The position numbers and the translations under genes were made by a program. A DNA stretch of 60,593 bases from assembly GCA_002269645.1 (NCBI GenBank), contig NIVC01004102.1, positions 1 through 60,593 on the forward strand, written 5' to 3'. Source of the stretch: Macrostomum lignano. Its lineage: Eukaryota. Within the stretch, counting starts at the first letter, position 1. Every line of letters begins with the position of its first letter. Below the pieces are notes generated by a model. That model was not told the DNA's origin and ran no database searches. It saw nothing but the letters and a program-made list of their open reading frames with translations. This document shows, one piece after another, positions 3,309 to 54,494 of this stretch.

Positions 3309-3738
3309 TGACGTCACTTGAGGTCTCCGGCCAGAGTACACGCGGCTGTGACTCAGTTGCTATTTTTAGCAACATGAGTCACTCCTCTCCTTAGAGAAGG
3401 GAGGGGTCCGAAAGCACGTGATTCTCCCGGTAAACAGGGCCAACGAGTGCAGTAAACATGTTTACGTTTACTGCACTTTAAGACTCCAAGAACACAAGAT
3501 CTGTCATGTGACTTGCTCACAAGACAGAGGAAAACGGGACGGGAACGAAACAGAGACAGCCTACAGCAGAGAAGCTGAGGGCTGAGAACAGAGACGCAGA
3601 AGGGCAGAACAGGCCAAGGGCAGCAACAGACGGGCGGGAAGCTGACCAGCGGCATACAGCAACCCAGGGCGGGGGTGAGGGCGAAGGAAGCTGCTGACAA
3701 TAGTGCGACGCCTAACACCAAACTAGCGGATCACTACA
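3309..3738 (-). mobile_element. Possible solo LTR (430 bp)
   Basis: GC-richer block in AT-rich flanks, bounded by TG...CA (TGACGT / ACTACA, imperfect inverted ends). The minus strand is CT-rich with AGTAAA-type signals. Flanks GAAC / CAAC are only a 3/4 TSD match. Confidence 0.35.
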
Positions 3739-4564
3739 CAACCTCAGACTAAAATATCGTACGAAGTGTCGAGGCTCAAGCATTCATCAAGGAATACACA
3801 GAATAGGTGGGCTCTAGTTCATATCTTTTCTTTCACCTGTTTCTATGCTACACCTTTTCTATGCTACAGACTATGCTACAGACTCAGGATAATTTTGTCT
3901 ATGGCTAAACCTTACTTCGGTTAGAATGTTTTGAGCTGGGGTTAGACTGGGTCCCAGTCTAAATTGTCTGAATTGAATTTCCGCTAGTTTTTTTAGAACT
4001 GGACTTTGATCAAAATCGAACGTGAAAATGTGTATTGCATTGCATGCATAAGCCGGAATTCGATGCTTCGGATGTGTCACAGTGAGTCATTCCCCCAGCC
4101 AAAACCCCCAGCTCACATAACAGCAATATTGTGTCAAAAAACACTGTCCAGGGAATACTCTCTCTGTCCAGGGAGTATTCCCTGCACTGTCCATGGAAAA
4201 ACACGCCATCTTTGTTCCAAGTTGATCTCCACGCGTGGCTGAAATTATAGATAGACTTAGACTGATTGAGAAATGCAATACTCAGGTATAAATAGACATG
4301 AATGGAAGTCTCTGGTGACTGGAGAGACGGTTGGATTCTAGAAGCGAGTTAACTCTGTATCCTGCTATCTCAATACTCTGAGTCAGAACATTGCTATTTC
4401 GTCTACGGGGGAGGTAGAGAAGCAAAGCGCTACATTGCGCAAAATAACAGTCATACTTCAAATCCTCTTTATTCCTTTACTCTATTGACTTAAAACATTT
4501 TTCGTCATTATATTCTGCTTTAAAAATATGCTCTATTATTATTAGCATGGTTTACATATTGCAG

Positions 4565-7225
4565 CGTGACTTGGACATGGCCTCGGCAGCCTATAACAAG
4601 AAATCCGCCTCATTTAGATCAGACACGCGTTTTCTACGCATGCTGCTGACTGTACGCTGGAGTCTGCGCAACGTCGCCAGCAAGGAGGCCGCAGAACAGT
4701 TGAAACAGGCGGCTGCACTTGAGTTCCGCGAGTTACAGGTGAGCAGTTTTGGCATTTATTTGACGCATTACAATAGTTGAAAGTCATTATCCGACATCAC
4801 GGAAAGTAGCAAAGAAATCGGTAGCATGTCCACTCTCGCGCCAAAGCCACTGGCTTTGATTCCGCTCGACCGTGCATGGAAATCTGCTTCTCGTGAGCTG
4901 AAATGGGTCCGGGGAATGTACGATATGGGTCGGCTCCTAGGGCTTTGTGCACATGCACACTGCCTAACGTTGAAAAGTCCGGCCACTTTACGCTGTGTGC
5001 TTGCGTTTGCGTATTGTAAGGTGCGCATTTACGTATTCAGGGGTCAGTGGTATGAGCATTTAGCTACAGTGCTTTCCTACTCGCTGGCTGTGTATAGACT
5101 TTCGCCTTGATTTGCGACAGTGCCTGAAGCCCCACCTGCGTCTATGTAGCACTAGTTGCAGACCGTAAGGCTAAAATTGAATTAAGAATTTAAGAATTGC
5201 ACGTTTACTTAATAATGATTCGCCCTCATCATGTTTGCTCCTCAGATCCGGCTGCCAGACTCTGAGCTGCGCCACCTACTGCGCGTCGAGTTGGTTCGCG
5301 CATTCTCCTCCATCGCTTTGGAGCCGGCGCTTCTACCGCTCTTGGCCGCCGGTGAGCATCGGCAGCCGGACGTTGTCAGCGTGCGGAAGTCTTGGCCAGT
5401 CTGGTGCAGCCTATGCGTTGAAGCGTTGCACGAGTTAACAGAGCTCAGTGGTTTCAGTTCGCCGCTTCCGAATATATGCGATTTGCTTAACGTTATTCAA
5501 GGCATTGAGGATATTATTGTTACCCAGCTGAGAAGCCGCTGGTCTAAGCTGCAGGCGCTGGAGTTCATCGGACGCCGATCGACCCCTGCTACATCAACCG
5601 CTGCTGTTACTGTCTCTGAATCTACTACAGCGTCCGTCCCACCTGCCGTAGCTCCAATCATGCAGTCTTCTGTAGAAGCTGCTAGCGATCGTCTGCAGGT
5701 GCCGCCGATGATGTCCTCATTAGTGCGCCCTTCATCGGAATCAGCAGCGTCGTCTTGCCAGGTAGGCTTCAGCAGCAGCGACTCCGGCCTGCTAAACTAT
5801 TCGACAGTCTTGAACTCAACGCAACCATCGGGCGCTGCACCGTACGGTCACGTTCAGCAATCAAGTCCGATGGCGATACCGCCTCTCATGTCGATGCCAT
5901 TTTCTGTCTCAACCTCCTCTAACTGCGGTTCTTCTGCTCAAGTTGTATTTCCCCAACCGCCGCCTCAGTCGTCACCACTTCCGGCTTGCCCAGTAATGGC
6001 GGCTTGCTTTTCAGGAAATGTAGGAGTAGCCCCATCATTGCCTGTGTCGCCTCATTTAAACATTTTCCCTCCTATGGACTTATTCGCACAGCCTTTGCCA
6101 CCTCTTCCTGCTAAGGCTTCCTGTCCTATGCAAATCCGTCTGTCAGAAACAATTTCGGCTGAGTTAGCTTCTGGAACTTCTACATGTAAAGCTTCTGTAA
6201 TAAATCCTGCGATACCCAGCTCACGTGTCACGACTTCGACTTCAGTAGTTGACTCTGGAACAGCTGCACCGTCTATTAATGAAGTAACAGTTGCGTCAGC
6301 TGTGACCACCACTTCCTCTGCAACCGGTTCGGATAATTTGCTACAGGCTGCACCAAACTTAAAATATTCCGTTAATGCCACAGCTTCTTCATTGCTTAGC
6401 TCTACCGGTACCTGCAGCTCCACCACTGTTGCTTCTTCTGTCACAGCTGCTGCTTCATCGTTGAGCTCTACCCGCTGCTCTACCCCTGTTGTAACAACAG
6501 CTTCCAAAGCTTCTACTTCGTTGCTAGACGCTTTCAGAAACTCTGCTTCCGGTACTGCTGCTTCTTTGTTTGGCTCTTTTAGAGTTTCAACTTCTAACAG
6601 CTCTGTTCCTGTCACATCCGCGTCGGTTAAAAAATCGATTGCAAGTACCTCTACCCTTGGTAGCGAATCGACCACACTGACTTCTGTCAAAATTGACGCG
6701 ACAAAAAACAAACCCGAGCTGATCGCTGCCTCGGATGCGTTAGCACGGAAAAAGTCATATAAACCCATGAAGTCTGCCTCTAAACAAAAGGAATCTATCG
6801 TTAATGCTCAAAGGTTAGCCAAAACCGCGTCGGTTAAAAGTAAGCAAAAATCATCTACGTCTGCTTCTACTGCCTCGCTGAAAAGAAAGTACAGCGCACG
6901 TACATCCGTCTCAGGTACTGCAGTGCACAGGAAGTCCAGCGCACGTACATTCGTCTCAGGTACTTCAGTGCACAGAAAGTCCAGCGCACCTACTTCTGTA
7001 TCAGACAAATCCAAGTCTAAACACTCGTCAACTTCAGATCTACATCAACATAGAAAGCGTCGAAATGAAGGCCCATCTAGCCAATCATCTTCATCAAAGA
7101 TTAACAAGGCTGTTATAAATATGGCCACAGCAGATAGAAACTGTGCTTCCTCGCATTTAAACGGTGAACTTTTATACTTTAATGATGAAATCGAACTAGA
7201 AGAGGGCGAAATTGTATCTGATTGA
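4565..7225 (+). CDS. Orphan protein: helical N-terminal region, long S/T/A/P low-complexity region, basic K/S-rich region and C-terminal ELEEGEI motif
   Basis: The 664-codon open frame 5231-7225 is solid. Upstream in-phase (phase 0) exons at 4565-4738 (ttgcag| ... CAG|gtgagc) and 4784-5020 (AAG|gtgcgc), joining acceptor cctcag| at 5245, are plausible but less certain. The true start is not located. Internal 45-bp coding repeat (SARTSVSGTAVHRKS x about 2.5). Confidence 0.65.
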
Positions 7226-7719
7226 TTTCTGAGGAAGCCGTCTCAAGTTATTTTATTCTGGTTAATTTCAATCTATCATTACCTCAATAATTATTGCTTG
7301 ATTTATTTAGTGGCTTTATATACGCGTCAGATGTGAACCCAGACCCAGCAATTGCTTTTGATCAATGTACATCCTGCTTGCCTGTTTTGCAAATCTTATA
7401 GTCATACATGTGATCCACCCTTAACTTGTGTTCAGAAACGCAGCTATTGCAATAAGTTACCACGCACTTTAGTGGCATGGTGCATGTGGAATAGTGTAAT
7501 CGACAGTGGCATGACTGAGCCCGGTGGCTGGGCAAAGTGGTCTTGCTTATTTTGATGCATTATTTATGTTTTAAGTGCGAACTGTCCCAATATTTAAATC
7601 TCTGAGCACCGGCTTTGTACACCAATCTAGCCACAGCTTGTGCCATAGACGAAAAACGTGGTAACCGGAGGGTCAGCTATGTGGATAAAAAAATAGGTTT
7701 CAACTTTTCGTCTTTATTG

Positions 7720-8077
7720 GTATTGCTTTTGTCAGCCTAACTGAGAATAAAGCCATCCAAAGTGAGAATCCTGCCTACGCTGACTGCGAAGGGCCTGGCT
7801 GCGTGCAGCCTTAGTCTATGGGCCATAGACAATAAAGGACAAGCAAAGTGATAAAAAGCCATCCAATGTGAGAATCGATTGGTCTATGCGTCGTATTCTT
7901 TTATTTTTATACCTTCTGAGCTTCTGAGCCATTATATGACTAGCCAATCCTAGCTTATCCTTTATAGTCTATGGCCCATAGACTAAGGCTGCACGCAGCC
8001 AGGCCCTTCGCAGTCAGCGTAGGCAGGATTCTCACTTTGGATGGCTTTATTCTCAGTTGGGCTGACAAAACCAATAC
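7720..8077. mobile_element. MITE-like foldback element with about 111-bp inverted arms
   Basis: 7720-7830 is the near-perfect reverse complement of 7967-8077. The inner end of each arm carries the palindrome GTCTATGG(G/C)CCATAGAC. Spacer is about 136 bp. Confidence 0.85.
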
Positions 8078-11000
8078 TGCAATGCTCTTTGGTTTATATA
8101 TTGTTTGTTGGCACATTCATCCGACATAGTTTTAATATTGTTGTTGGTTTCGATAAACGTGGATCAACTAATCAATCAAGTTTCTTGAGCCACGAGTCGG
8201 TCCTGCTCGGAGGTCTCACACAGTATGAGCACCCGCTCGGGCACTGATCTGCATTACGCACAATTTCTTTTTTTACCTTTCAGGGGCACAAAATTGTCTC
8301 AAAATCTATATTGTTTTGTTTGCATGTATCGACAAAATGTTTTTAGTAATTTTTTTAATTATGTCGGCTTCGTGCTTGTTTGCTTTTGTACTGTGTTATT
8401 GTATTATCATTATTATTTGTATTACTGTATTAGTTATGAACTTTCAGTTTTTCTCAAAAAACTGCAAAATTCTGCAATAATTTTTTGTTTTTACTTGTAG
8501 CAGGTTCTACCTGAAGCTTTTTAAATTTATTTATTTAATATCGTTTGCAGGGCACTTTCATTTAATTAGATAGTACAGCTAGTTTGTTTTGCATCTGCAT
8601 GATGTGTTACCTCACTATTTCGGATAGATCGAATGAATTAAATTTGAGAAGACCCTAGGGGACCTTAGCTATAGGAACTTTTTGCGTATCTAAGCGATGC
8701 ACATTTATCGGGACGGCATATAATGTACAAGACATAAGCTTAACAGGCTCTTGCAAAAACTTGCAATAAAATGAAGGGAGGCAGACAGTTCGTACGAAAT
8801 AGCAGCAGTCATTTACGAGAGGGTATGAACCAATAGAAATCTGGATGGGAGAGAGAAACAGACCAGGCTATTGAATTGAGTGTACGGAGGGTTAACCCCA
8901 CGTTTCTGAATGAAGCCGCCCTAAAGCTAAAAATGTATTATCTAAGAATGTACATTGACTAAGTACATCTAAGGGTTTGGTTGGCTGGGGGTAGGGCGTT
9001 TGTCCAATTTATCGATCCACTCAAGGCTTTTGCCTAACCCCTATTTTTTATCGCTCTCGTGCCACAAACAGTCAACGACCCAACCACCCCACCTCCCTTA
9101 GTTTTATTTATTTAAAGAAGGCATCGTCTCAATGACTGAGCATTTTTGCTTAGACTTTTAGAGAGAAAGTATATGGAAGCTTGTGAGTTGTGACAGTGTC
9201 AGATGAAACCATTCATATATTTGCCCAAATCCCTTACGGCGCGGCCGACACAACATGCAAATTGCATACAGAAATTGATATTAGTTATTAGTATTAACAT
9301 TCAGGACTTGCTCCGGTACGTGTATTACTGTATTACCCATGTTTTTGAAAAACTTTTAAGCAAACTCGCTGCTGATCAAGATGCCACGACGGGTAACGGC
9401 ACTTTGGCGTGCTCGTAGTTCCTACATACGTTACTGCAACTAGCATTAAAGACATTGCTTAACTTGAGTGCCGCGTGACAGCGCGAATAGGGGGAGAGCT
9501 GTTGCTGAGTGTATTACAATGTGTGCCAAGAGTCCTAATTAGTTTTAAGGCAAGTGTCTCATACATAGGTCAAGTTTGCCAAGATGGCATATTCTAATTC
9601 ATGTTAATCGTTTTTTACCTATTTCAGCGTTTTGGAATACGATTCGTTAAACAATTCTACTCTAGTAGATCATTAAAATATTATCTAAAGATATTATGTA
9701 CGCAGCAAAATTGAAATAAAAGGTTCGATGCTGCTACTGCAATCGTTGTGATGTCCAACATCCCTACATAGTGTGTACTATATATGAAGCATTTACAAAT
9801 CAGGATAAAGAGTAGAGTAATATTAGAGTAGACTCCGCTCCGGACAGTTAAGTAGAGCCCTCTCGCCTCAAAAAGGGATAACTTCTCAAGTTTCAATCAC
9901 GAATGATGTAACCTGCGGATTGCGCAGAGTGTCTCTTTATATAGAATCATGGCTTCTATTTTATTTCTTCCTGCGAGAGATTGTTCTGATTCTCCCATTG
10001 ACTATACATGTATCGTGTAACCTTCCCATAAAGCCTTCGTATTCAGCAGACGCCACGGCTTTAAATTAAATAAAAATATTGACTGTAATTTTGTCTAAGA
10101 ATAAAAGCCAAGACCTCCAGCGTAAAAGAAAAATATATATATTTCTAGCTTCAAAACAGGTTCGACTGGCTAGCATTTGTTTTTAGTTTTTGGCCTAAAC
10201 CGAAAAGTCCACCACTTACAAGAGTGTTTTCATCTCATTTCGATTTTGACATCGGAAAGCATAAAACGAATGCTTCAAGCTAGCTCAACTAGAATAGAAT
10301 AATAAAATTTTGCGAGGAATCTGCTTCAACTGAGGTAACTATAACAACTGAGCTAACGAGAAACGAGTGGACTCTTCGCTGAAAATTTCACGATGCAACT
10401 GCAATCGAGTGCTCCAACGTGGCAGGATTTCACAGCCGTGTCTGAACTCTTAGCCCGACTTCTGGTCTTGCCCTAATTTGTAATGCAACTAAACAAATTT
10501 AATGGTAAGTAAGACTAATATTTGCTGAAATTGACGCCACTAATGGTTAAAGCGGATACTTTTTCTTTTTTTAGGATGCATGCTTCCACAGGTCCAGCTG
10601 GATTGTACAGCACGTCTGGGCGGCTTCTCCTGCGCCGGTTTCGGAGGTTCTTATTAAAAGTATTTGATTACTGAACAAGCTTCAAACCGAAATCTGGATC
10701 CGGATTTCGGAACTTAGCGCTTTTTTGTTTACTGCTGAGCTGATAAGATATTGCCATGTACGAATTCCAATTCTCCCTTTCCACTCCCCGACTCGCTCAG
10801 GTCAGAAAACCGCGCAGGACTTCAGACCAGGTATTAAACCACACAAAGAACCACTTGAACAAATATTGTTGAGATGAGATCGCCTTATTGAGCCAGAACG
10901 ACAATAAGGCCAAAGCGTTGGCGCCGAGTTGTTACTTTGAAGTCCAAACCATCTGTCTGTGGCCCAGACTTGTCAGTTTCTGCACACAGTTCTGTCAGTA

Positions 11001-12536
11001 AGCTTATTGATAAGATACGCTCATCATGCGTGCACTTTCAAAGCCATAAAGTGCGCAGTATTCGGCTGCAGCGGTGCACTGCAAAATGCTTTTGTGTCTA
11101 ATGTCAGGTTTGCTTGTTTCTCGGTCGAGTTTCAGTAATTTGAGCGTTGTCTATGGCCTAAGCCTATCTATGTTTTGTAGGATTTCCCCTTTGATGTCTG
11201 TTTTTAACTTGACGTGAATAGAAAAGGAACAGCTAGGAATTTAAGAAGATAAAATTGGGGCAGGCCCACAGGACCTTCTTTACCCTCAATCCTCGAGGGT
11301 AGTCTATATCCTTGGAACCGTGGGTTATCCACCCTTATCAGTGCCAAGGGACCGTAGGGTCTGCGTTCGGGCTTATTTTATACCCTATACGCATCTGTCC
11401 AGAGAAAGATTGAGTCATCACTATTTCCGTTCTTTCCCCACCGGGCTTTTTTGTATATAAAATTCTGGTCTGGTAGAAGTTAAAAGAAGCGATTTTGGCA
11501 TAGTCTGTCCTAACAATGGAGTCTAGACAGGACACTACATGCTTGTCGAATTATGGTTGGTTGAAGGATCATGACAAATGTGCATTGCTTGCTCGTATAC
11601 CACTCACCTCCATATAGTTGATTCGTGCTTTGGGGTCCTTCCCCCCCCCCCCCCTGTACCGAAACCCCTCTTCTCCCCCATAGTTAAACAACCCGCATTC
11701 TGATTCACCTAGAGACCCGAATCATTTGAACATTAGCGGCTGTTTTCCAATTTGGTGTCGGTAATAGCACGTAAGAGTTCACTATTTTCTGCGAGTTTGT
11801 TATTCGTTGTATTTGCTATACTTTATATTTAGCTTCATAACTTTGAACTGCAAAATCTAATTTGACTAAATCCGAATTAAATTTTGCTTGTATCAATTCT
11901 GACTGCTTGCAATTTTGTCTATTCGAACGGGCCACTATTTCAATTGAAGCCGCAACTATACGACTGGAAAACGCGCTTTAAGTGCACATGGGACATCCTG
12001 AAGAAAGAACAAGTCAATTGTTGTTCGTCTTATCCGTACTACTGCTATTGTGAAAATATTTAATTCAACTCTGTTTTTGCCTTAAACCGCGCGCTACCTC
12101 CACTTTCTATCGGTATCCGGATGCTCTTGAGTTTAAGAGCATTTGAATTTGATAATACGAGAGTGTGAGACTGACTGCAATGCAGCTTCTTGACATTCTT
12201 ATTGATAAATCAACAAGTCTACTACTTTTTATGGATTGATTCTTACTGTGAATCATTCTTTACTCAGGTGGCTTACTCAATGCAATGTAAAAAGGAAAAG
12301 TTATCCCTAAGCTTGTGATTAGCTTAAAAATTTTTTTTTAGTTTAAGTCATCTTTGCTTAATCTTTGCTTGCTGTATTGTTCTATTCGGTGTAAGTGTTT
12401 TAGTGTTTGTCAGACAACATAAATTATTGATTTATTGATTATTTCGTTTTGTCTTGCTCGCGAATTTTTTTCTAATCTTTTTCTAGGTTATAATATATTT
12501 CAGGATGCAAGATAATCTGTGTAGGTTATTGGAGTA

Positions 12537-15500
12537 ATGAATTCACCCTTAATGCCGCCGTTTAAACCTCGCTGTTCAAACTCGCAATTCCAGGCGTTGA
12601 GGCACTGTCAAACGCCTTCATTATCGCTGTCGGAGAGAAGCTCCGGGCCAAAAGACAATAATAACATTGCCAACTGCAGCAACAATAATAATATTGGCTC
12701 GGCTTCTCCAATTAAAAAGAAGAAGAAAAAGGTCACCACCGCCGCTGCGTCTGGAGGCCTCAATCAGACAGCCGATTCCATGGCTTCGGGTTCGGCCGGC
12801 AGGTTTCATCCAAATGTTGTTAACGAGCGCTACGTTGGCACAGAGGCTTTGAAACAGATCCGGGTGCCCAAAGTGGCGCATAGCTCCAAGGGTGACTAAG
12901 CTAATAACCAATTTAGCCTTAGTAAATAGCTTTTTCAGGCTGTAGACTACTTACCTTTCTTCTTTCTATTTGCAGAATTTCTGCGCAGCGTTGACCTAAA
13001 TTCCAACGAGTACAAGCACGACATTAACTGCATCATATCGCGCGGCTTCTTAAATAAGGAATTAAGAAGCAAATTTTCCCCGTCAAAAGTATTTGCTATC
13101 GGCAACAAGAGCCTCGGTGATAAGGTAAAAATAAGCAGTTTATAGAAATGCGCTTAGCTGGTTGCTGCTACTAGTAGTACTATATCGAATTCTAGTGCAC
13201 AAAAATAACCAAATTGAGTAATTCTGTTGTCACAGTTCGCCACCAAGAAGGCGGAGATCCAGGCCGCCATTGCCGAAGAAAACGCCAGCAATCTGGCCGC
13301 CCTGGCTGGCTCCGTCAAGCTGGATGAGCGGTACGGTTTCGTCTACCTGGCGCCCGTGCCGGACGTAATGGATCGATTGCGCGGCATTGCTGAGAACGGC
13401 ATCCGCCGCGGCAACCTGCCAGACTCTACTCTGGCCATCGGCTCTACCGGCGTCTCCCTGGGCCGGTACGTCGATCGGATCTCACCGAAGTTCGGCCTGC
13501 CAAAGACTGGCTGGCTGGTCATCTGTCGCTACGTTCGCGGCCGCGTCTGCTACTGGACCGAGGGCGACAGCGTTGTGGAGCCACAGCCAATGTACGACTG
13601 TCACGAGAGCGTTCGTCAGACGCTTACAGACGATGAATTGATTAATAGAAAAGCTGCAAGCATAATTGAAGCCGGATTTCATAGCAGCCAGGTGTTCCTA
13701 TTTGAGTACGGACCCGACCTGGAATTGATGGACCATCCCAGGCACGTGCTGCCTGTGGCTGCTGTTCAATTCAAGTTCGATGGCTTGGTAAGCATTTTGG
13801 CCTGGAATTTGAACCAGGCTCTGAAGCTGTCCACTAATAGAGTCTCCCTGTTGAGACCTTTCCAGTGTCGCGTTTATGGGACATTTCCTGCTCCCTAATT
13901 TGCTCACCAGCAAACGCAGACTTGCCTCTTGAATCTAGGCCATTCGTCATCAACAGTGAAGCTGTGATGCTTGAGTTCGAGCTCAGCGCACGCCCTGTAG
14001 GAAACTTTTCTCTGCTTACGATATTTGTGTTTATTAATTTGCATCTTGAGCATCTGTCATTTATTGAGAACTAGGTATCTTTAATAAGTTAATTTTTTGC
14101 ATCGCTTTTAATAGATTTACGATAGATTACTAGTAGATTACTGATTAGAATAGGCAACCTTCGCATACAAAGCATATTCTGAGACATCGAATAGTTTATC
14201 CCAAATCCCGTGCACCAGATCAGGGACCAGTGCTTCAAGCGGAAGACCCAGCCGACACTCGACCGCAAGCAGCCAAAGCAACAACAACAGGAGACGCAGG
14301 CGCAGCAGGTTCAACAACAAATGCAGCAGGATCAGAAGGATGAAGCTGAGACGCTGGAGCATGCGCCTAAACCTGAGCAGAAGCAGCAGGAAAATGCAAA
14401 GTGCTCTGCAGCATCAGCTGAAGCCGTGTCCTCCTCCGCCGAATCTTCCACTGAGTCGAGCCCGATTCGTAGCCGAAGTCAACGACGGCCGCGGCCCGTG
14501 TGCCCCGATCGGCAAGATTGGGTGAAGAAATTCAACGACGGCGCCTACCTTGTTGGCGAAGTCCTGCTGCCCCTGCTGCCAGCGGGACCCAGCCTGAAGC
14601 TCGGCCTGGTCTCGCTTGAGAAAACGCCCTCCGTGCTGCCATTTCTGCAGCTCGGCTCGCTGCCGTCGGCCACCCCCTGCCGCGTTGTCGACTCGGCCGA
14701 TCTGGAGGCCCGCCTGGCCAACTGTGGCGTCTCCCTGACCGAGGAGAAGCCCGTCTGCCGCCTGGCCGACTCCAGCGCCGGCTACGTCAGCTACCTGGCC
14801 GGACTGTTCGACCCGTCTAACGCCGCCCGGGCCCGGACACTCTGCGAGATGCTGATCACCAAGGACTGCCTGCTGCTGGCGCCCATGACCGAATCGGCTG
14901 ACGGCGCCGGCGCGCTCTGCTATTTGGTGCCGTCGCAGTCGGCGCTATCTAAGCGGCTTCAACTAGACAGCGCTACCCGCATGCTGGGCCGCACGAAGAA
15001 TCTGATTCACGTGCTGATCTGGCTGCCCATTCCCCGGCGCCAGTTGCTCTGCCAAGGCTCGACCGACCCGGGCGCGCAGTGGGCGCCAGTCTGCCGTTCA
15101 ACCGTTCGATGCTACAATCTGCAGGACTGTTTCAGCGGCCTGGCCGACCGGATGAAACAGGCGGCCGAGGCTATCGGCAAGCAGCGTATTGAGGCCGCCG
15201 CTAAGGCCGCCCAGGAGCAGGCCAAGCAGCTGGAGAGTCGGGATCCCAGGGTGCGCTTGGCGGCGGCCAGGTCGGGCGCTAAACCCGTTTCTGCCGCACC
15301 TGTGTCTGCTCCACGGGGGTCTGCCGCACCTGTGTCTGCTCCACAGGGGTCTGCCGCACCTGTGTCTGCTCCACAGGGGTCTGCCGCACCTGTGTCTGCT
15401 CCACCTGTGTCTACTCCACTGGTGTCCGCCGCACCTGAGTCTGCTTCATCGGTGTTTGCCACGCCTGTGTCATTGCTACGGGATTCTGCCACACCTGTGC

Positions 15501-16609
15501 CACCAGATCCACAGGTATCGGCTGTATCGGCTGTACCTGTGCTAGATCCACAGGAATCAGCTGTACCTGTTCTAGATCCACAGGTATCGGCTGTACCTGT
15601 TCTAGATCCACAGGTATCAGCTGCACCTGTTCCAGATCCACAGGTATCAGCTGGACCTGTGCCAGATCCACAGGTATCAGCTGCACCTGTTCCAGATCCA
15701 CAGGTTTCAGACTCGCTGATCGCAGCATCTACAGAAACACCGGTGCCTGTCACATCGAAATCCGGTTCACCAGTACCTGCCGCTCAGAATAAATCTGGGA
15801 AACCGGTGCCTGCAGTCATTCCTGGTATCAGCAGCCATAATAGCGGCAGTAGGGCTGCTGCTAGCGACAGGTAAGTCTGTAATCGCATTTTGTATTTCGC
15901 ATTTGCATGCATCATAGAGGCAGTGAATTTTAGTACAATTCAACCTGTTTGAATCGCGCAGGCCGAGCCGCAGTCAGGACAGGTATCGCAGCAGCGACCG
16001 AGGCAGCAACTATCGCAGAAACGACAGCCACTATAGAAGAAGCAGTCGTAGTCGTCGGATCAGTAGCAGCAGCAGCAATAGCAGTAGCAGCAGTAATCGT
16101 AAAATCAGCAGCGGCCATAGAAAAAGCAGCGACAGCAGAAGCCGTCGCAAAAGCAGCACCAGTGATAGAAGACGCAGCAATAGTCGCAGCCGAAGCAGCA
16201 ATCGCAGCGCAGCCGAAGCCGTGAGCGTCGCCATAGAGCGCGCAAAGAGCAGAAAAAACCTGACTGTCCTGCGGAGCCTATCGCCGATTACCAGCCCGAC
16301 TTCGCCTATCCTGCCGCCGCGCCGCCCTCTCTAAAGCGACGTCTCACAATGGAGGAGTCGCTCCGCCTGTGGGACGCCGAGGAGACGGCTGTTGCGGCCG
16401 ATGTTTTCAATAAATTCAACTTCTTTCTGGCCAAGCGGCGCCGGACAAGCCAACAAGCTGATCAACCGTCGGACTCTTCAGCCGCCGAGGCCAGCGCGAA
16501 CGGCGAAGCCTCCGACGCCGCCCCCGCCGCTGCCCCAGAAACTCCCAAGGCTTATTGGACTCTGCTTACTAAGCCAGAGTTTCTATCTTTTGTAAAGAAT
16601 TCCTTTTAA
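12537..16609 (+). CDS. TASOR: TASOR-like protein (DUF3715 pseudo-PARP + SPOC-like + P/A/V repeats + RS domain), about 1126 aa, 5 coding exons
   Basis: Exons 12537-12891, 12976-13124, 13236-13787, about 14195-15870 (this acceptor is uncertain; 14154 is an alternative) and 15962-16609. All are GT-AG and phase-compatible, with one missing base near 16208. Exon 3 has EPQPMYDCHES...SQVFLFEYGPDLELMDHPRHVLPVAAVQF, matching the DUF3715 end as I recall it from TASOR/TEX15 (ECHVS...YFYEY...PRHVCPYAVVSF). Exon 4 has a SPOC-like pattern (YVSYL...LCEMLITKDCLLLAP...LCYLVP...LIHVLIW). AATAAA overlaps the stop (16608-16613). The symbol denotes likeness; orthology is not proven. Confidence 0.8.
15290..15710 (+). 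repeat. Coding minisatellites in the TASOR-like gene: 30-bp x about 4 (GSAAPVSAPQ) and 27-bp x about 7 (PVPDPQVSA)
   Basis: Directly visible; unit lengths are multiples of 3 and in frame. Confidence 0.9.
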
Positions 16610-16976
16610 TAAAGCGAGGAACTTCTGTGATATATTGCCAAATAGATGAAGGGGACATGAAACTGCTGTCTTAGAAAAACTAAACCGACACAGCATACTT
16701 TGCATTCAGTTCAATAATTATTGCCGTTGAAAATAACGTTAAATAACGTCACTTACGAGCCAACAATACAGCGAAGATCAGACAACAGGAGATGCTCAAT
16801 CAAGCGGATAATTCCATTGAGAATCAAGAATGCTTGCTTGGAAATTTCCTACTTGATTGTCTTTTTCAACCAGAGAGCAGAGCCTTCACTTGTCGTCTGT
16901 GGTAGAAAGCAGCTTGGAATTGCGAGACTGGCTTTATTGTCTATGGCCCGAGTGGCTGTGGCTGCAGGGAAGCAAT

Positions 16977-17169
16977 GGGCCGTATGCAGAAAGCTTAGTC
17001 CAGACTAGCTAGTCCGGACTTGGGTAGTTAAGTCTATAGTCTATGGTCCAGCTACCCTAGTTCTGCTATAGTAGACCGGTCTAACTTTGTGTTTCTGCAT
17101 ACCAAATCCAAGTCCAGACTAGCTTTTCAAGACCGGACTACCCTAGACAGAGCTTTCTGCATACGGCCC
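16977..17169. mobile_element. 193-bp MITE with perfect 19-bp TIR GGGCCGTATGCAGAAAGCT
   Basis: 16977-16995 and 17151-17169 are exact reverse complements. GGGCC ends resemble PIF/Harbinger-type TIRs, but there is no matching 3-bp TSD. Confidence 0.8.
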
Positions 17170-18101
17170 TTTATCAGTTATTTGGTGCAAGTACTGGCAC
17201 AAATGAGCCAGCTAAGGCCATAGACTGTCTTGTCCCTTCCATCTATTGGTGATATATCAGAGGGAATGCGCTCTAACAACGCAACAATTTACTATGCCTT
17301 AACGTCTCGATTACCCCATCTGTCCTCGTCTGTCTATCGAACCTGAAGCTGATCCAAAGCGTGACTAAGACTATTCGTCACTCACAGAGATATCGGCAGC
17401 TTTTAAATTGCTTCCATAACCAACAGAAAACAGTAAATTTTTTTGCCAGGTTTTGCTTTTCGGCCAACTCGCAACTGTTCTCAAATTGTTTTGTTTGTAA
17501 CGAAGTTGTATTATTTTTTTTAAATCCAGTTGATTAGTGTGTTTTATTTGCCTCAGTAAATTCAGGTAGGCACCGCAAATCAATGGACGGGACGGTTGGT
17601 TATTGCTTGGAGCTCATTGCGTTTTGAAGCTCTTCTGCATTCTTTAATTTCTTTGATTTTCCAAGAATTTAAGCACAACCGTCCCGTTCTACTTTGTGTC
17701 TTGTGCCGAATTTACCTGGGTTTCAAAATTTATTATTTGTACCGTTTTTTGTTCAGAGCTTTGCGCTAATTCTGCCGCTCGACTACTTTTGTGCTTTTTG
17801 TTTGAGTTCGAGGCTTGACCGCATTTTCAATTTAGTTTCAAATTATAATTATTTTCTTGTGCTCTAATTATCGAATTTTGATTTGCTTGAATGTTAAAAA
17901 CCTGCATGCTTGAAAGCCACAGCTCCGCTCCAACCCCGTCTGTCAGTTTACTTTTACTGGCTTTGCTCTTTGTTAATGCACTTTATAGGTAAGGATAACT
18001 TTTGTTCCATTCTCTGTGTTTGGTGAAAGCCGGTTGTACGAGTTTGATCTTTACAGATCATGCATGTGAGCTTTTTAATAATTGCTTGAACTGAAGTAAA
18101 C

Positions 18102-18552
18102 AGAATGGATTGCTAATCTAGCCAACATCACTGTTGAAGGAATAGAATGGATTGCTAATCTAGCCAGCATCACTGATGAAGGAACAGAATGGATTGCTAA
18201 TCTAGCCAACGTCAGTCATAAAGGAATAGAATGGATTGCTAATCTAGCCAACATCACTGATGAAGGAATAGAATGGATTGCTAATCTAGCCAACACTTAC
18301 TGAATGGAAATCTAGAATTTGAATGAATGGATTGCTAATCTAGCCAACATCACTGATGAGGTAATAGAATGGATTGCTAATCTAGCCAACATCACTGATG
18401 AAGGAATATAATGGATTGCTAATCTAGCCAGCATCACTGATGAAGGAATAGAATGGATTGCTAATCTAGCCAGCATCACTGATGAAGGAATATAATGGAT
18501 TGCTAATCTAACCAACGTCACTCATAAAGGAATAGAATAGATTGCTAATCTA
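18102..18552. repeat. 42-bp satellite, locus 1 (about 11 diverged copies)
   Basis: Unit GAATGGATTGCTAATCTAGCCAACATCACTGATGAAGGAATA; same family and orientation as 24655-25786. Confidence 0.95.
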
Positions 18553-19496: not shown

Positions 19497-20110
19497 GGAT
19501 TGTGCATTGCGGTGGGTGTGGAATGGGCTGGCTGATTGTGGTGGGTGTGGAATGGGCTGGCTGTGCATTGCGGTGGGTGTGGAATGGGCTGGCTGTGGAT
19601 TGTGGTGGGTGTGGAATGGGCTGGCTGTGCATTGCGGTGGGTGTGGAATGGGCTGGCTGTGCATTGCGGTGGGTGTGGAATGGGCTGGCTGTGGATTGTG
19701 GTGGGTGTGGAATGGGCTGGCTGTGGATTGCGGTGGGTGTGGAATGGGCTGGCTGTGGATTGTGGTGGGTGTGGAATGGGCTGGCTGTGGATTGTGGTGG
19801 GTGTGGAATATGGGCTGGCTGTGGATTGTGGTTGTTGCAGAATATGGGCTGGCTGTGGATTGTGGTTGTTGCAGAATATGGGCTGGCTGTGGATTGTGAT
19901 GGTTGTGGAATATGGGCTGGCTGTGGATTGTGGTGGTTGTGGAATATGGGCTGGCTGTGGATTGTGGTTGTTGCAGAATATGGGCTGGCTGTGGATTGTG
20001 GTGGTTGTGGAATATGGGCTGGCTGTGGATTGTGGTGGTTGTGGAATATGGGCTGGCTGTGGATTGTAGTGGTTGTAGAATATGGGCTGGCTGTGGATTG
20101 TAGTGGCGGT
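19497..20110. repeat. 32/34-bp GT-rich minisatellite (GAATGGGCTGGCTGTGGATTGTGGTGGGTGTG)
   Basis: Directly visible. The left part is a 32-bp variant and the right part a 34-bp GAATAT variant. Confidence 0.93.
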
Positions 20111-23805: not shown

Positions 23806-24218
<413 letters not shown>

Positions 24219-24654: not shown

Positions 24655-25786
24655 CAACATCACTGATGAAGGAATAGAATGGATTGCTAATCTAGCCAAC
24701 ATCACTGATGAAGGAATAGAATGGATTGCTAATCTAGCCAACATCACTGATGAAGGAATAGAATGGATTACTAATCAAGCCAACATCATTGATTAAGGAA
24801 TAGAATGGATTGCTAATCTAGCCAGCATCACTGATGAAGGAATAGAATGGATTGCTAATCTAGCCAACGTCACTTATGAAGGAATAGAATGGATTGCTAA
24901 TCTAGCCAATATCACTGATGAAGGAATAGAATGGATTGCTAATCTAGCCAATATCACTGATGAAGAAATAGAATGGATTGCTAATCTAGCCAATATCACT
25001 GATGAAGGAATAGAATGGATTGCTAATCTAGCCAGCATCACTGATGAAGGAATAGAATGGATTGCTAATCTAGCCAACATCACTGATGAAGGAATAGAAT
25101 GGATTGCTAATCTAGCCAACATCACTGATGAAGGAATAGAATGGATTGCTAATCTAGCCAATATCACTGATGAAGGAATAGAATGGATTGCTAATCTAGC
25201 CAGCATCACTGATGAAGGAATAGAATGGATTGCTAATCTAGCCAACATCACTGATGAAGGAATAGAATGGATTGCTAATCTAGCCAACATCACTGATGAA
25301 GGAATAGAATGGATTGCTAATCTAGCCAATATCACTGATGAAGGAATAGAATGGATTGCTAATCTAGCCAACATCACTGATGAAGGAATAGAATGGATTG
25401 CTAATCTAGCCAATATCACTGATGAAGGAATATAATGGATTGCTAATCTAGCCAACATCACTGATGAAGGAATAGAATGGATTGCTAATCTAGCCAACAT
25501 CACTGATGAAGGAATAGAATGGATTGCTAATCTAGCCAACATCACTGATGAAGGAATAGAATGGATTGCTAATCTAGCCAACATCACTGATGAAGGAATA
25601 GAATGGATTGCTAATCTAGCCAACATCACTGATGAAGGAATAGAATGGATTGCTAATCTAGCCAACATCACTGATGAAGGAATAGAATGGATTGCTAATC
25701 TAGCCAACATCACTGATGAAGGAATAGAATGGATTGCTAATCTAGCCAGCATCATGAGTGATGAGAATCGATTGCTAATCTAGCCA
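24655..25786. repeat. 42-bp satellite, locus 2 (about 27 copies)
   Basis: Same unit as 18102-18552 but more homogeneous; the 14-aa period in the ORF track confirms 42 bp. Confidence 0.97.
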
Positions 25787-26354
25787 AAAACTATAGTCTA
25801 GCAAGCAAGTCTTGGAAAGTCACCCAACTCAACAGTGTATCTTTGCTATTCTTTAATTAAGCTTTAGTATAATTATTGATAATTGGATTAAGAGTTGCAC
25901 AAAGACTAGACCAGTAAATGTCTTGTATACAGATAAACATAGTAAAGGTAAATGGCGACATTCTTTTCACTGTACAAAAGCAGCAATGAAAGTGATTCCT
26001 GAAAGAGTTTGCATTCCTAAAAAAGAAATCATTCCTTGGAAGCAGAAACCCCCAAAACTGCATGGCTGGGGAAGAGCAGAAGAGAAAGCAAAACGCATAG
26101 TTTCTGAGTTCTGCATTGCTTTTATGCATCATCAATTCAGAGGATGCTGATGAGGCTTGAGTTCACACGGGCTGGAGTGCGGAGCCGCCCAGATGAGTGG
26201 CGGTGTTAGGGCGCCTCAGCTTCAGCAAATGCTTCGTCAATTGCCTGGCTCCGAAATTAATATTGAAGCTCTGCATATGCCTTGTGCTCACCCAATTCTT
26301 TGCTGGCTTCTGGGAGTGCTCAGGCTGAAAGAAAGTAACGTTGACAGACTCAGG

Positions 26355-28446: not shown

Positions 28447-28752
<306 letters not shown>

Positions 28753-30264: not shown

Positions 30265-31103
30265 GAGTTTGGCGAACTGCTTTGCTTCCCTCAACAGCCA
30301 ACGGATGCCGAGGGGACGTTCCATTGTGTGCCAAATCTTGTTGCAACAAAAATAGAATCCAGCTCGAGCTAAACTGGGAAGTCTGTGCCGGGCCAGGCTG
30401 CAGAAGAATAGCCAGGCTCGAGGCAAGTTCGCGAGTCCAATTGTGCGCCGATGGGTAAATTTAGCAGCTGTCTGTTGGCGAGACTCTGCACAGCGCAGCC
30501 TGCGGACAGCCACTGATTCTATTTTTAGAAACAGTCGTTATTATCTTTAGCAGTTGGCAGTTTTCGAATTTCCTGTTAGTTCTTTTCAACACTTTTAGAA
30601 ATATGATTGCGCCACATCTGACGGAATGAAGGCGAAGGTTTCTGGCATCGATGGACTTGAAAATAGTTTACTTTAGAAAGAAATTAACTTGCGAATATCG
30701 GATAGTTGCTGATAATATATTGATATGTTGCTATCGTATATCGTCTATTAATAGCTCGTGTTTAATATCGTCTACATAGATCATTCTTTGATACTTTGTA
30801 TGCTCTTGATAGGCTGGTCTATACTCAGCAACATCGAAAAGTCGCCATCACAGAAGATTCCATTGATGGTGGCCACTTTTGAGAGTGCAGGTAAAGTCTC
30901 TCAGTGTTTGCGAGTGACGCAACTCAGCTACGCTGTGGCAGACTTGAGTTGAGGAATGAAGTGGGAATGGGGAAGCGGTGTGCGAGGGTTGGACGGATTA
31001 AAGCAACCCTCAGTTTTTTCTCGTATCTTTTATTTCAGAATAGTCCAAGATAAATTGCTCACTGGCGCAGAGAGTGCATGACGACTTTTCCAATATTGCT
31101 GAG

Positions 31104-32320
31104 TATATTGATAAACTGAGAGATTACTATAGTTGATATATTGATAAACTGAGAGATTACTATAGTTGATATATTGATAAACTGAGAGATTACTATAGTT
31201 GATATATTGATAAACTGAGAGATTACTATAGTTGATATATTGATAAACTGAGAGATTACTATAGTTGATATATTGATAAACTGAGAGATTACTATAGTTG
31301 ATATATTGATAAACTGAGAGATTACTATAGTTGATATATTGATAAACTGAGAGATTACTATAGTTGATATATTGATAAACTGAGAGATTACTATAGTTGA
31401 TATATTGATAAACTGAGAGATTACTATAGTTGATATATTGATAAACTGAGAGATTACTATAGTTGATATATTGATAAACTGAGAGATTACTATAGTTGAT
31501 ATATTGATAAACTGAGAGATTACTATAGTTGATATATTGATAAACTGAGAGATTACTATAGTTGATATATTGATAAACTGAGAGATTACTATAGTTGATA
31601 TATTGATAAACTGAGAGATTACTATAGTTGATATATTGATAAACTGAGAGATTACTATAGTTGATATATTGATAAACTGAGAGATTACTATAGTTGATAT
31701 ATTGATAAACTGAGAGATTACTATAGTTGATATATTGATAAACTGAGAGATTACTATAGTTGATATGTTGATAAACTGAGAGATTACTATAGTTGATATA
31801 TTGATAAACTGAGAGATTACTATAGTTGATATATTGATAAACTGAGAGATTACTATAGTTGATATGTTGATAAACTGAGAGATTACTATAGTTGATATAT
31901 TGATAAACTGAGAGATTACTATAGTTGATATATTGATAAACTGAGAGATTACTATAGTTGATATGTTGATAAACTGAGAGATTACTATAGTTGATATGTT
32001 GATAAACTGAGAGATTACTATAGTTGATATGTTGATAAACTGAGAGATTACTATAGTTGATATATTGATAAACTGAGAGATTACTATAGTTGATATATTG
32101 ATAAACTGAGAGATTACTATAGTTGATATATTGATAAACTGAGAGATTACTATAGTTGATATATTGATAAACTGAGAGATTACTATAGTTGATATATTGA
32201 TAAACTGAGAGATTACTATAGTTGATATGTTGATAAACTGAGAGATTACTATAGTTGATATATTGATAAACTGAGAGATTACTATAGTTGATATATTGAT
32301 AAACTGAGTGATTACTAGTT
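31104..32320. repeat. 33-bp AT-rich satellite, about 37 near-identical copies (TATATTGATAAACTGAGAGATTACTATAGTTGA)
   Basis: Directly visible; 11-aa period in the ORF track; only an occasional A>G variant. Confidence 0.98.
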
Positions 32321-38933: not shown

Positions 38934-39219
38934 ATTCATCGTCGCACATCCGGTTGCGCCAGCCTCGCCCTGGGTTATAAAATTAGCAACAAGTCAGAAA
39001 TTCGCCTTAGCCTAAAATTCTAAATAAGCGATTTGCTAAAAAACTTGAGCCGAAAAAACATAAAAATGCAGTTGTTTTTTATTCTTTAAAATTATTTTTA
39101 ACTGAAATAATAATCCAGTGAATGTCTGACTGCTTAAAATAGGCTTGCAGACCTGAAAGTGTTGCGTTTTCCTGACTAGTTTAGCTGAAGCCGTCAGTCA
39201 ATCAATTTATCTATATATA

Positions 39220-40081
<862 letters not shown>

Positions 40082-42702: not shown

Positions 42703-42864
42703 GCCAAGCCAGACGTTCCCACGGGCAGGCCAAAAACACACTGTTCCTTGTTATGACACACAGCTGGGCGAGTAGGGCAGGCATATTTTGGTAGCTACCG
42801 CTTCTAATTTTAGGTCTGCTCGGGGCAGCTCGCGGTTATTCCAGGGGTGCCCAATTCGGCTCTT

Positions 42865-52596: not shown

Positions 52597-54494
<1,898 letters not shown>

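What the first reader, a model, noticed from the sequence alone, without database searches (positions are those of the whole stretch)
12537..16609. TASOR-like (HUSH scaffold) gene carrying an RS domain
Seen: a DUF3715-like exon followed by a SPOC-like region, the TASOR domain order, then a roughly 85-aa Arg/Ser-rich stretch (RRSSRSRR...RRRSNSRSRSSNRSRSRSRERRHR after restoring one base) in the last exon. Known: TASOR is the core of HUSH, which silences intron-poor retroelement transcripts, and RS domains mark splicing and nuclear-speckle proteins. TASOR-like proteins outside vertebrates are already reported, so presence alone is not new. I do not recall an RS domain in human TASOR. Inference: this invertebrate version may couple transposon silencing directly to splicing or intron sensing in a very repeat-rich genome.
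Basis: partly seen in the sequence, partly recalled or inferred. Interest (0 to 1): 0.78.

Follow-up and report, generated by a model that had tools for sequence, protein, structure and literature searches.

The report
Flatworm TASOR-like gene with Arg/Ser tail
This is a five-exon gene of the flatworm Macrostomum lignano for a divergent TASOR-like transposon-silencing scaffold (pseudo-PARP plus SPOC domain), and its last exon encodes an Arg/Ser-rich tail of about 100 residues that all three public protein models recovered here miss; any link to splicing is untested.

Summary
Window 12537-16609 (+) is a five-exon GT-AG gene of Macrostomum lignano. The isolated N-terminal domain passes Pfam DUF3715 (34.3 bits, cut-off 28.5) and hits the human TASOR pseudo-PARP crystal structure 6TL1 (E 3.6e-9).

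The second domain has no Pfam hit. It aligns collinearly with the SPOC domains of invertebrate TASOR-like proteins, beats 200 of 200 shuffles in profile comparison, and models as a SPOC barrel. That model used a non-independent alignment.

DomI, DomII and the PIN domain were not found, so it is "TASOR-like", not a shown TASOR orthologue.

Exon 5 enters the Arg/Ser frame through a strong splice junction. About 100 residues are 66% R+S, with 21 RS/SR dipeptides. Reaching the C-terminal tail needs one extra base at about 16208. A second assembly of the same locus differs almost only by 1-3 bp indels, including at this site, so an assembly error is likely. The three public protein models recovered here lack the tail.

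Parasitic-flatworm orthologues also carry R/S/Y-rich C-termini; non-flatworm homologues have sparser ones.

No transcript evidence was available, and the proposed coupling to splicing is speculation. The nearest functional analogy is Periphilin's Arg/Tyr- and Ser-rich RNA-binding region. Interest is moderate.

The parts
12537..12891 (+). Exon 1. ATG at 12537. Low-complexity N-terminus with a KKKKKK run (possible nuclear localisation signal, inferred). The start of the pseudo-PARP domain (IRVPK motif) is at 12858.
   Evidence: identical to P0001
12976..13124 (+). Exon 2, the N-terminal part of the DUF3715/pseudo-PARP domain.
13236..13787 (+). Exon 3, the core of the DUF3715 (RDTS, pseudo-PARP) domain. 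It carries the family motifs EPQPMYDCH and HPRHVLPVAAVQF.
   Evidence: PF12509 34.3 bits, above the 28.5 cut-off; 6TL1 E 3.6e-9; alignment
14219..15870 (+). Exon 4: Gln-rich linker, SPOC-like domain, helix, DPRV motif and Pro/Val/Ser/Ala decapeptide repeats.
   Evidence: intron 4 donor is CAG|GTAAGT
14543..15040 (+). SPOC-like beta-barrel domain (about residues 461-626).
   Evidence: hhalign score 22.6 against a shuffle null of 11.8 +/- 1.9, 0 of 200 shuffles reaching it; collinear MAFFT alignment; AlphaFold2 pLDDT 82; Foldseek top hits are the SHARP, RBM15 and PHF3 SPOC domains. No Pfam hit.
15239..15259 (+). RDPRVRL, a copy of the short DPR[ILVM] motif that recurs in DUF3715 proteins.
   Evidence: 25 occurrences against 2.5 expected in 52 proteins (51 homologues plus this one)
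15290..15710 (+). Two arrays of 30-bp (10-residue) tandem repeats: SAAPVSAPQG type at 15290-15404 and VSAAPVPDPQ type at 15524-15710. Presumed disordered spacer.
15962..16609 (+). Exon 5: Arg/Ser-rich region, C-terminal tail and the TAA stop at 16607-16609.
15962..16258 (+). Arg/Ser-rich (RS-like) region of about 100 residues. It starts R/Y/S-rich (DRYRSSDRGSNYRRNDSHYRR), then has a poly-Ser part, then RS runs.
   Evidence: GC is 55.5%, like the exons (58-61%) and unlike the introns (34-41%).
16206..16209 (+). Frameshift site. One extra base here joins the RS frame to the tail frame (…SNRS|RSRSRERRHR…).
   Evidence: The other assembly carries +AG at this site and -G at 16113.
16259..16606 (+). 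C-terminal tail of about 115 residues (…LKRRLTMEESLRLWDAEETAVAADVFNKFNFFLAKRRR…KAYWTLLTKPEFLSFVKNSF). No known domain.
   Evidence: Present in P0001 and P0002. No Pfam or PDB match.

Best explanation
This is a real, probably functional Macrostomum lignano gene for a highly divergent TASOR-like protein.

Shown:
- An N-terminal pseudo-PARP (DUF3715/RDTS) domain is followed, after a Gln-rich linker, by a SPOC-type beta-barrel.
- The C-terminal 40% is low-complexity: decapeptide P/V/S/A repeats, then an Arg/Ser-rich region of about 100 residues, then a unique tail of about 115 residues.
- The RS-coding stretch is in frame with exon 4 through a consensus splice junction.

Inferred:
- The single frameshift at about 16208 is an assembly indel, so the real product is about 1118 aa.
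- The protein is nuclear and acts, like TASOR-family proteins, as a scaffold for transcription-coupled repression of transposons.
- The R/S(/Y)-rich region supplies non-specific binding to RNA or nascent ribonucleoprotein, and/or phosphorylation-regulated self-association. In vertebrate HUSH that role is contributed in trans by the Arg/Tyr-rich and Ser-rich regions of Periphilin.
- It is not an SR splicing factor, and a specific intron-sensing role is not implied by the data.
For: Identity:
- PF12509 scores above the gathering cut-off on the isolated domain.
- phmmer hits the TASOR crystal structure 6TL1 at E 3.6e-9.
- An exhaustive phmmer search gave 54 hits, nearly all over residues 100-352, including proteins named 'TASOR pseudo-PARP domain-containing' from six parasitic flatworms.
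- The family motifs are retained.

SPOC:
- The parasitic-flatworm second domain matches the TASOR-like SPOC profile at 92.9% probability, E 3.6e-7.
- The M. lignano domain scores 22.6 and 24.7 against the two profiles, with 0 of 200 column shuffles reaching either.
- The alignment is collinear end to end.
- AlphaFold2 gives pLDDT 82. Foldseek top hits are the SHARP, RBM15 and PHF3 SPOC domains, then Ku.
- Five of the homologues in that alignment hit PF07744.

RS region is exonic and in frame:
- Splice phase places it in frame.
- The NCBI model P0003 uses the same intron 4 and reads exon 5 contiguously.
- GC is 55.5%, against 34-41% for the four introns.
- All six Arg codons are used.
- RS character continues in the tail frame right after the shift (RSRSRERRHRARKEQKK).

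Frameshift as assembly error: 29 of the 32 differing positions between the window and NIVC01004496.1 over 14 kb are gaps, in runs of 1-3 bp. Five of those indel sites lie inside this coding sequence. In that assembly the two exon-5 indels sum to the +1 needed.

Lineage trait: the next seven proteins after this one in RS/SR density are all parasitic-flatworm orthologues (the taxon of one, P0052, is inferred from its similarity to the Fasciola protein).
Against: - No transcript or peptide evidence could be obtained. The three public protein models recovered here all lack the RS region: P0001 and P0002 splice it out, and P0003 reads it in the Ala-rich frame.
- The M. lignano domain 2 has no Pfam SPOC or any other hit, and hhalign E-values are only about 0.01.
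- The confident AlphaFold2 model used an alignment containing known TASOR-like SPOC sequences. With only the M. lignano paralogue in the alignment, pLDDT was 35.
- DomI, DomII and PIN are absent or undetectable, so the HUSH-type partners are unproven.
- The RS/SR dipeptide count equals what the composition alone predicts. Ser is encoded only by AGC and AGT, so the region could be a decayed (AGC)n tract.
- The function is entirely by analogy.
Confidence: 0.6

Rival explanations
1. The Arg/Ser stretch is not part of the mature protein. Either it is removed by splicing (as in the UniProt models, or by a possible in-frame intron 15984-16212), or exon 5 is read in the Ala/Val-rich frame as in the NCBI model.
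For: - P0001 and P0002 join 15236 to a 14-nt micro-exon (15835-15848) and then to 16337, skipping the repeats and the RS region.
- P0003 reads GRAAVRTGIAAATEAAT….
- A GT…AG pair at 15984 and 16212 would link exon 4 to the tail in frame with no base correction (my reading of the sequence).
- Openness of the frames is uninformative, because AGC-type repeats rarely mutate to stop codons.
Against: - The P0001 path needs donors GTCGGG and GTAGGG and a 14-nt micro-exon, while the perfect donor CAG|GTAAGT at 15871 goes unused. It looks like a predictor rescuing a frame in an error-prone assembly (inference).
- The frame of P0003 is caused by a 1-bp deletion at window position 15764 in that assembly.
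- The hypothetical intron has 53% GC against 34-41% for the real introns, a weak donor and no pyrimidine tract.
Confidence: 0.2
2. The frameshift is real. This copy encodes a 1026-aa protein that keeps most of the RS region but ends in an unrelated 41-residue peptide, or it is a decaying duplicate in a genome with extra gene copies.
For: - Both assemblies are disturbed at exactly this site.
- M. lignano has at least one more near-identical copy, P0002, with several substitutions, and a divergent paralogue, P0006/P0066.
Against: - About 2.7 kb of upstream coding sequence is intact.
- The tail ORF of about 130 codons downstream is open and nearly identical in P0002.
- Indels dominate all differences between the two assemblies, in exons and elsewhere. 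That is the signature of long-read consensus error rather than of mutation.
Confidence: 0.12
3. One reading: the RS domain makes this TASOR-like protein a direct sensor of splicing or introns, coupling spliceosome or speckle contacts to transposon silencing.
For: - RS domains mediate contacts among splicing factors (general knowledge).
- Vertebrate HUSH targets long intronless transcripts (PMC8770142).
- The RS-like region is far denser here than in any other DUF3715 homologue scanned.
Against: - There is no RRM or other splicing-factor domain.
- The related parasitic-flatworm tails are R/S/Y/D/H-rich rather than canonical RS.
- No paper in the library links TASOR to an RS domain.
- Nothing in the sequence speaks to intron sensing.
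Confidence: 0.08

Closest known systems
Invertebrate 'TASOR-like' DUF3715-SPOC proteins (Schöpp et al. 2023, PMC10578480), for example Saccoglossus XP_006818571 and Branchiostoma LOC118416698
   Same: An N-terminal DUF3715 pseudo-PARP is followed directly by a SPOC barrel. A DPR[ILVM] motif lies downstream, and the C-terminal half is long and disordered.
   Different: - The sequence is much more divergent: 34 bits on PF12509 against 53-157 bits for the others scanned.
- The SPOC domain is invisible to Pfam.
- No DomI was detected.
- The protein is shorter (about 1118 aa).
- It carries a dense Arg/Ser region.
Parasitic-flatworm 'TASOR pseudo-PARP domain-containing' proteins (Schistosoma mekongi KAK4468083, Fasciola THD22322, Opisthorchis XP_009164792, Rodentolepis VDO03432)
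   Same: Same phylum and the same DUF3715 plus SPOC-type second domain, with an R/S/Y-rich low-complexity C-terminal region.
   Different: - Only profile-level similarity in domain 2.
- Their tails carry their own motifs (EEGEIVDD, DVDYRR, PRYSVYHP) that are absent here.
- Their RS/SR density is half or less (7-11 against 22 per 100 aa).
Vertebrate TASOR / TASOR2 (HUSH core; 6TL1)
   Same: The pseudo-PARP domain is directly recognisable (E 3.6e-9) and a SPOC-like domain follows it.
   Different: - No DomI, no TASOR alpha/beta (DomII) domain and no PIN domain.
- The Periphilin-binding linker is not identifiable.
- The vertebrate TASOR-type homologues scanned have no RS-like region.
Periphilin-1 (HUSH RNA-binding subunit)
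   Same: The layout of exon 5 resembles Periphilin: an Arg/Tyr-rich stretch, then a Ser-rich stretch, then a short C-terminal region (predicted helical by eye only). [quoted passage not shown]
   Different: No sequence homology was found: no Pfam or PDB match for the tail. Here the region sits on the TASOR-like chain itself. The resemblance is one of composition only.
SR and SR-related proteins (RS domains)
   Same: A region of about 100 residues with 66% Arg+Ser and runs such as RSRSRSR.
   Different: No RRM. The RS/SR alternation is no higher than the composition predicts. It is interrupted by poly-Ser and by N, K and D residues.

Membership tests
TASOR-like (DUF3715-SPOC-DomI; Schöpp et al. 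2023) | N-terminal DUF3715 / RDTS pseudo-PARP domain | tested here: met
   PF12509 at 34.3 bits against a cut-off of 28.5, E 2.8e-8, on residues 88-352. 6TL1 at E 3.6e-9. The P.P..DCH and PRHV.P.A.V.F motifs are kept. The domain is missed on the full-length protein.
TASOR-like (DUF3715-SPOC-DomI; Schöpp et al. 2023) | SPOC beta-barrel immediately C-terminal to DUF3715 | tested here: met
   Moderate strength. hhalign exceeds 200 of 200 shuffles. The alignment is collinear. The AlphaFold2 model (pLDDT 82) best matches the SHARP, RBM15 and PHF3 SPOC domains. The model's alignment included homologues' SPOC domains, and there is no Pfam hit for the M. lignano domain itself.
TASOR-like (DUF3715-SPOC-DomI; Schöpp et al. 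2023) | DomI (MPP8-binding domain) after SPOC | tested here: not met
   Only about 75 residues lie between the SPOC domain and the DPRV motif. hhalign against vertebrate DomI aligns 18 columns at P 0.055. A very divergent DomI cannot be excluded.
Vertebrate TASOR/TASOR2 orthologue | C-terminal DomII (TASOR_alpha-beta, PF23314) and PIN_TASOR (PF24630) | tested here: not met
   No Pfam hit on the full protein or on the tail. Both domains are found in the vertebrate homologue P0046.
HUSH complex subunit | Assembly with MPP8 and Periphilin; recruitment of SETDB1 and MORC2 | not testable with these tools
   This needs the whole M. lignano proteome and biochemistry. Only this 60-kb window was available.
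SR protein (classical) | One or two RRMs plus a C-terminal RS domain of at least 50 residues with consecutive RS/SR dipeptides | tested here: not met
   No RRM. The RS-like region is present (66% R+S, 21 dipeptides) but with no alternation beyond what the composition predicts.
Periphilin / Lge1-type | Homologous C-terminal helical dimerisation domain | tested here: not met
   The tail gives no Pfam hit at E up to 10 and no PDB chain at E up to 10.
TEX15 | DUF3715 plus TEX15 domain(s); vertebrate-specific | tested here: not met
   No TEX15 domain hit in Pfam. The domain after DUF3715 is SPOC-like.

The most novel reading that the evidence does not exclude
Flatworm TASOR-like proteins carry in cis the Arg/Ser/Tyr-rich, RNA-binding, self-associating low-complexity module that vertebrate HUSH obtains in trans from Periphilin. 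On this reading the M. lignano gene encodes a single-chain scaffold-plus-RNA-sensor, whose RS-type tail (possibly regulated by SRPK-type phosphorylation) ties nascent-transcript recognition to silencing in a genome that is mostly repeats.
Probability: 0.12. Interest if true: 0.7.

Novelty: new variant of a known kind. Interest (0 to 1): 0.4.

Why it matters
TASOR-like proteins outside vertebrates are known only from sequence surveys, and none has been studied functionally as far as the searched literature shows.

M. lignano is a transgenic and RNAi-tractable flatworm with an extremely repeat-rich genome (my knowledge), so this gene is a practical entry point to ask what a DUF3715-SPOC protein does without DomI, DomII or PIN.

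The R/S-rich tail is shared in weaker form by the parasitic-flatworm orthologues. This raises a testable idea: the RNA-binding low-complexity function may be built into the scaffold in this phylum.

Practically, all three public protein models recovered for this gene are corrupted by assembly indels and hide about 330 residues, including the tail.

Tried and rejected
- Full-length Pfam scan: no hit (probably composition-bias filtering, my inference). The domain appeared only when scanned in isolation.
- Word-index homology search with the C-terminal tail: nothing, not even the identical P0001.
- The same search with the domain-2 alignment: only the M. lignano paralogues P0006 and P0066.
- Look-ups of contigs encoding P0001, P0002, P0004 and P0006: not on record. 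So no second genomic copy or relative's locus could be read, and no transcript evidence was reached.
- AlphaFold2 of domain 2 with the two-sequence alignment: pLDDT 35, unusable.
- DomI search by hhalign: no signal.
- PDB sequence searches with domain 2, the tail and the RS region: nothing meaningful.
- Periphilin homology of the tail: rejected for lack of any hit.
- TEX15 and classical SR protein membership: rejected because domains are missing.
- The long ORFs elsewhere in the window (43-2304, 24874-25755, 31059-32390, 40381-41709, 42751-44295, 44457-45869) turned out to be minisatellite arrays, not genes.
- Literature searches for M. lignano with HUSH, and for TASOR with RS domain: no paper.
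Full report
**Source and gene model.** The window is Macrostomum lignano DNA. The translated domains are 100% identical to UniProt A0A1I8H9D3 ("DUF3715 domain-containing protein", P0001). They also match the NCBI model BOX15_Mlig000723g14 (P0003).

Three-frame translation and splice-site inspection give five exons on the + strand: 12537-12891, 12976-13124, 13236-13787, 14219-15870 and 15962-16609. The four GT-AG introns are 84, 111, 431 and 91 nt long. Exon junctions 1-4 are identical to those in P0001. Introns 3 and 4 are also used by the NCBI model, as shown by mapping P0003 onto its contig.

**First domain.** Pfam finds nothing on the full-length protein. That is probably a composition-bias effect (my inference), because residues 88-352 alone hit PF12509 (DUF3715) at E 2.8e-8 and 34.3 bits, above the 28.5 cut-off. 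The paralogous model P0002 hits it as well.

The same segment finds the crystal structure of the human TASOR pseudo-PARP domain (6TL1) by plain phmmer at E 3.6e-9. An exhaustive phmmer search of 1.84 billion representative proteins returned 54 hits at E below 1e-3, almost all confined to residues 100-352. They include:
- Saccoglossus, Branchiostoma and Dimorphilus proteins and hagfish TASOR;
- proteins that UniProt calls "TASOR pseudo-PARP domain-containing" from Schistosoma, Calicophoron, Opisthorchis and Fasciola, plus related proteins from Spirometra and Rodentolepis.

A multiple alignment shows the domain is complete, from the F/I-x-V-P-K motif in exon 1 to the PRHV-P-A-V-F strand at the end of exon 3. 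The hallmark EPQPMYDCH is retained. At 34 bits it is the most divergent member scanned; the others score 53-157 bits.

**Second domain.** Residues 441-700 have no Pfam hit, neither PF07744 nor anything else. At sequence level they find only two M. lignano paralogues, P0006 (39% identity) and the fragment P0066. Three lines of evidence nevertheless point to a TASOR-type SPOC barrel:
- **Profile comparison.** The parasitic-flatworm orthologues share a second domain that matches a profile of invertebrate and vertebrate TASOR-like SPOC domains at 92.9% probability, E 3.6e-7. The M. lignano domain scores 22.6 against that SPOC profile and 24.7 against the parasitic-flatworm profile. Column-shuffled nulls are 11.8 +/- 1.9 and 14.3 +/- 2.5, and 0 of 200 shuffles reach the observed value in either case. 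The nominal hhalign E-values are only about 0.01.
- **Alignment.** MAFFT aligns the domain collinearly with the homologues' SPOC domains from the first strand (AYLVGEVLL against Y-x-V-W-x-G-x-L) to the last (LIHVLIWLP against L-H-x-L-F-x-S). Five of those homologues hit PF07744 themselves, best E 9.8e-10.
- **Structure.** AlphaFold2 with that 14-sequence alignment gives pLDDT 82 and pTM 0.82. Foldseek places the SPOC domains of SHARP (E 2.7e-4 and 5.8e-4, probability 1.0), RBM15 and PHF3 at the top, followed by Ku barrels.

The caveat is that this alignment contained known SPOC sequences. With only the M. lignano paralogue in the alignment, the model was useless at pLDDT 35. I therefore treat "SPOC-like" as supported at moderate strength.

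**What is missing.** Only about 75 residues separate the SPOC barrel from the repeats, and they show no similarity to vertebrate DomI. The Pfam families TASOR_alpha-beta and PIN_TASOR, found in the vertebrate homologue P0046, are absent.

By the definition in Schöpp et al. 2023 (DUF3715-SPOC-DomI; PMC10578480), the protein meets two of three features. It is "TASOR-like" in architecture, but it is not shown to be a HUSH scaffold. In human TASOR, DomI is the MPP8-binding element (PMC7532188).

A supporting detail is the motif RDPRVRL, directly after the domain. DPR[ILVM] occurs 25 times in the 52 proteins scanned (51 homologues plus this one), against 2.5 expected, usually as [KR]-D-P-R-[LVI]-x-[KR] downstream of the SPOC domain. 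I know of no described function for it.

**The Arg/Ser region.** Exon 4 ends with two arrays of 30-bp repeats that encode P/V/S/A decapeptides, followed by the consensus donor CAG|GTAAGT. With the acceptor at 15961/15962, the phase puts exon 5 in the frame RPSRSQDRYRSSDRGSNYRRNDSHYRRSSRSRRISSSSSNSSSSSNRKISSGHRKSSDSRSRRKSSTSDRRRSNSRSRSSNRS. Together with the next 17 residues in the tail frame (RSRSRERRHRARKEQKK), this makes a 100-residue region of 36% Ser and 30% Arg with 21 RS/SR dipeptides.

That dipeptide count is what the composition alone predicts (my arithmetic). Ser uses only AGC and AGT, so the tract may have grown from an (AGC)n repeat. Arg, however, uses all six codons. The region's GC content (55.5%) matches the exons (58-61%) and not the four introns (34-41%).

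**The frameshift.** As written, the RS frame runs on into AAEAVSV… and stops at 16332-16334. The long tail ORF lies in another frame, starting at 16208. One additional base at 16208/16209 joins them.

The same locus in assembly GCA_002269645.1 (NIVC01004496.1, L001) is 99.77% identical over 14 kb. Of its 32 differing positions, 29 are gaps, in runs of 1-3 bp. Five of these indel sites fall inside this coding sequence: 13440, 14979-81, 15764, 16113 and 16207. In that assembly the two exon-5 indels (-1 and +2) sum to the +1 that is needed, so exon 5 is a single ORF from acceptor to stop. This is the pattern of long-read consensus error, so I consider an assembly artefact the likeliest cause.

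**Why the public models miss the tail.** P0001 and P0002 jump from a GTCGGG donor at 15237 to a 14-nt micro-exon and then to 16337. P0003 is thrown into the Ala-rich frame by the missing base at 15764.

A weak GT…AG pair (15984 and 16212) could also restore the frame by removing most of the RS region, and I cannot exclude it without cDNA. No transcript-level data could be reached.

**Relatives.** Scanning all homologues in 100-residue windows, the M. lignano protein has 22 RS/SR dipeptides at 68% R+S. The next seven are all parasitic-flatworm orthologues with 7-11 (the taxon of one, P0052, is inferred from its similarity to the Fasciola protein). The best non-flatworm proteins have at most 8, and the vertebrate TASOR-type proteins at most 6. 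The parasitic-flatworm tails are R/S/Y/D/H-rich with their own motifs and cannot be aligned to this one. An R/S-rich disordered C-terminus therefore looks like a flatworm trait of this family, taken to an extreme here.

**Mechanism.** By homology, the N-terminal module is the RDTS pseudo-PARP plus SPOC unit that is essential for TASOR-dependent silencing (PMC7532188, PMC10578480).

For the tail, the best-grounded analogy is not an SR splicing factor, because there is no RRM. It is Periphilin, whose disordered Arg/Tyr-rich N-terminus and Ser-rich region bind target RNA and self-associate, and are essential for HUSH (PMC11754731). The first 30 residues of exon 5 are R/Y/S-rich, followed by poly-Ser and then RS runs.

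I therefore propose, as inference, that the tail provides RNA or ribonucleoprotein binding or condensation in cis. No paper in the library connects TASOR with an RS domain or M. lignano with HUSH.

**Verdict.** The gene is a divergent new variant of the known TASOR-like kind. It already exists in databases as a truncated model, and its hidden R/S-rich tail is worth checking by cDNA. Interest is moderate (0.4).

Noticed in passing
window 15239-15259 (RDPRVRL); homologues P0008-P0053: A short motif DPR[ILVM], usually [KR]-D-P-R-[LVI]-x-[KR], occurs 25 times in the 52 DUF3715 proteins scanned (51 homologues plus this one) against 2.5 expected. It typically lies downstream of the SPOC domain, and the M. 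lignano protein has one copy. I know of no described function.
   Followed up: partly
window 3581-17622 versus L001 (NIVC01004496.1): The two assemblies of the same locus differ at 32 positions. 29 of them are gaps, in runs of 1-3 bp, and five of these indel sites lie inside this gene's coding sequence. All three public protein models of the gene (A0A1I8H9D3, A0A1I8H023, BOX15_Mlig000723g14) are truncated or frame-shifted as a result.
   Followed up: yes
window 232-2286, 18102-18552, 19501-20106, 23806-24218, 24655-25787, 28447-28752, 31104-32334, 39218-40081, 40561-41590, 42867-44034, 44469-45788, 48157-51727, 52714-54227, 55839-56821, 58965-59522, 60129-60593: The window is dominated by long micro- and minisatellite arrays (units of 3-68 bp, up to 3.5 kb). 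Most of the long ORFs listed mechanically are these arrays, and their weak Pfam hits (MgtE_N, GerPC, RFC_C) are spurious.
   Followed up: partly
window 18102-18552 and 24655-25787: The same 42-bp satellite unit (…GAATGGATTGCTAATCTAGCCAACATCACTGATGAAGGAAT…) forms two separate arrays about 6 kb apart.
   Followed up: no
window 7720-7844 and 7953-8077: An inverted repeat pair of about 125 bp at about 96% identity, separated by about 110 bp. It lies between the upstream gene and the TASOR-like gene and could be a MITE-like or hairpin element.
   Followed up: no
window 5231-7225 (+) (called gene at L001 1003-3645, roughly window 4583-7225): An upstream neighbour gene with a 664-codon ORF and no Pfam family. 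Function unknown.
   Followed up: no
window 59541-60422 (-): This ORF has a glycosyltransferase DXD sugar-binding region (PF04488, E 3.3e-11). It is probably an exon of a glycosyltransferase gene that runs off the window end.
   Followed up: no
P0006 (A0A1I8I998) and P0066 (A0A1I8FQ60), elsewhere in the M. lignano genome: M. lignano has a divergent paralogue of the SPOC-like domain (39% identity) besides the near-identical copy P0002. The family has therefore duplicated and diverged within this species.
   Followed up: partly
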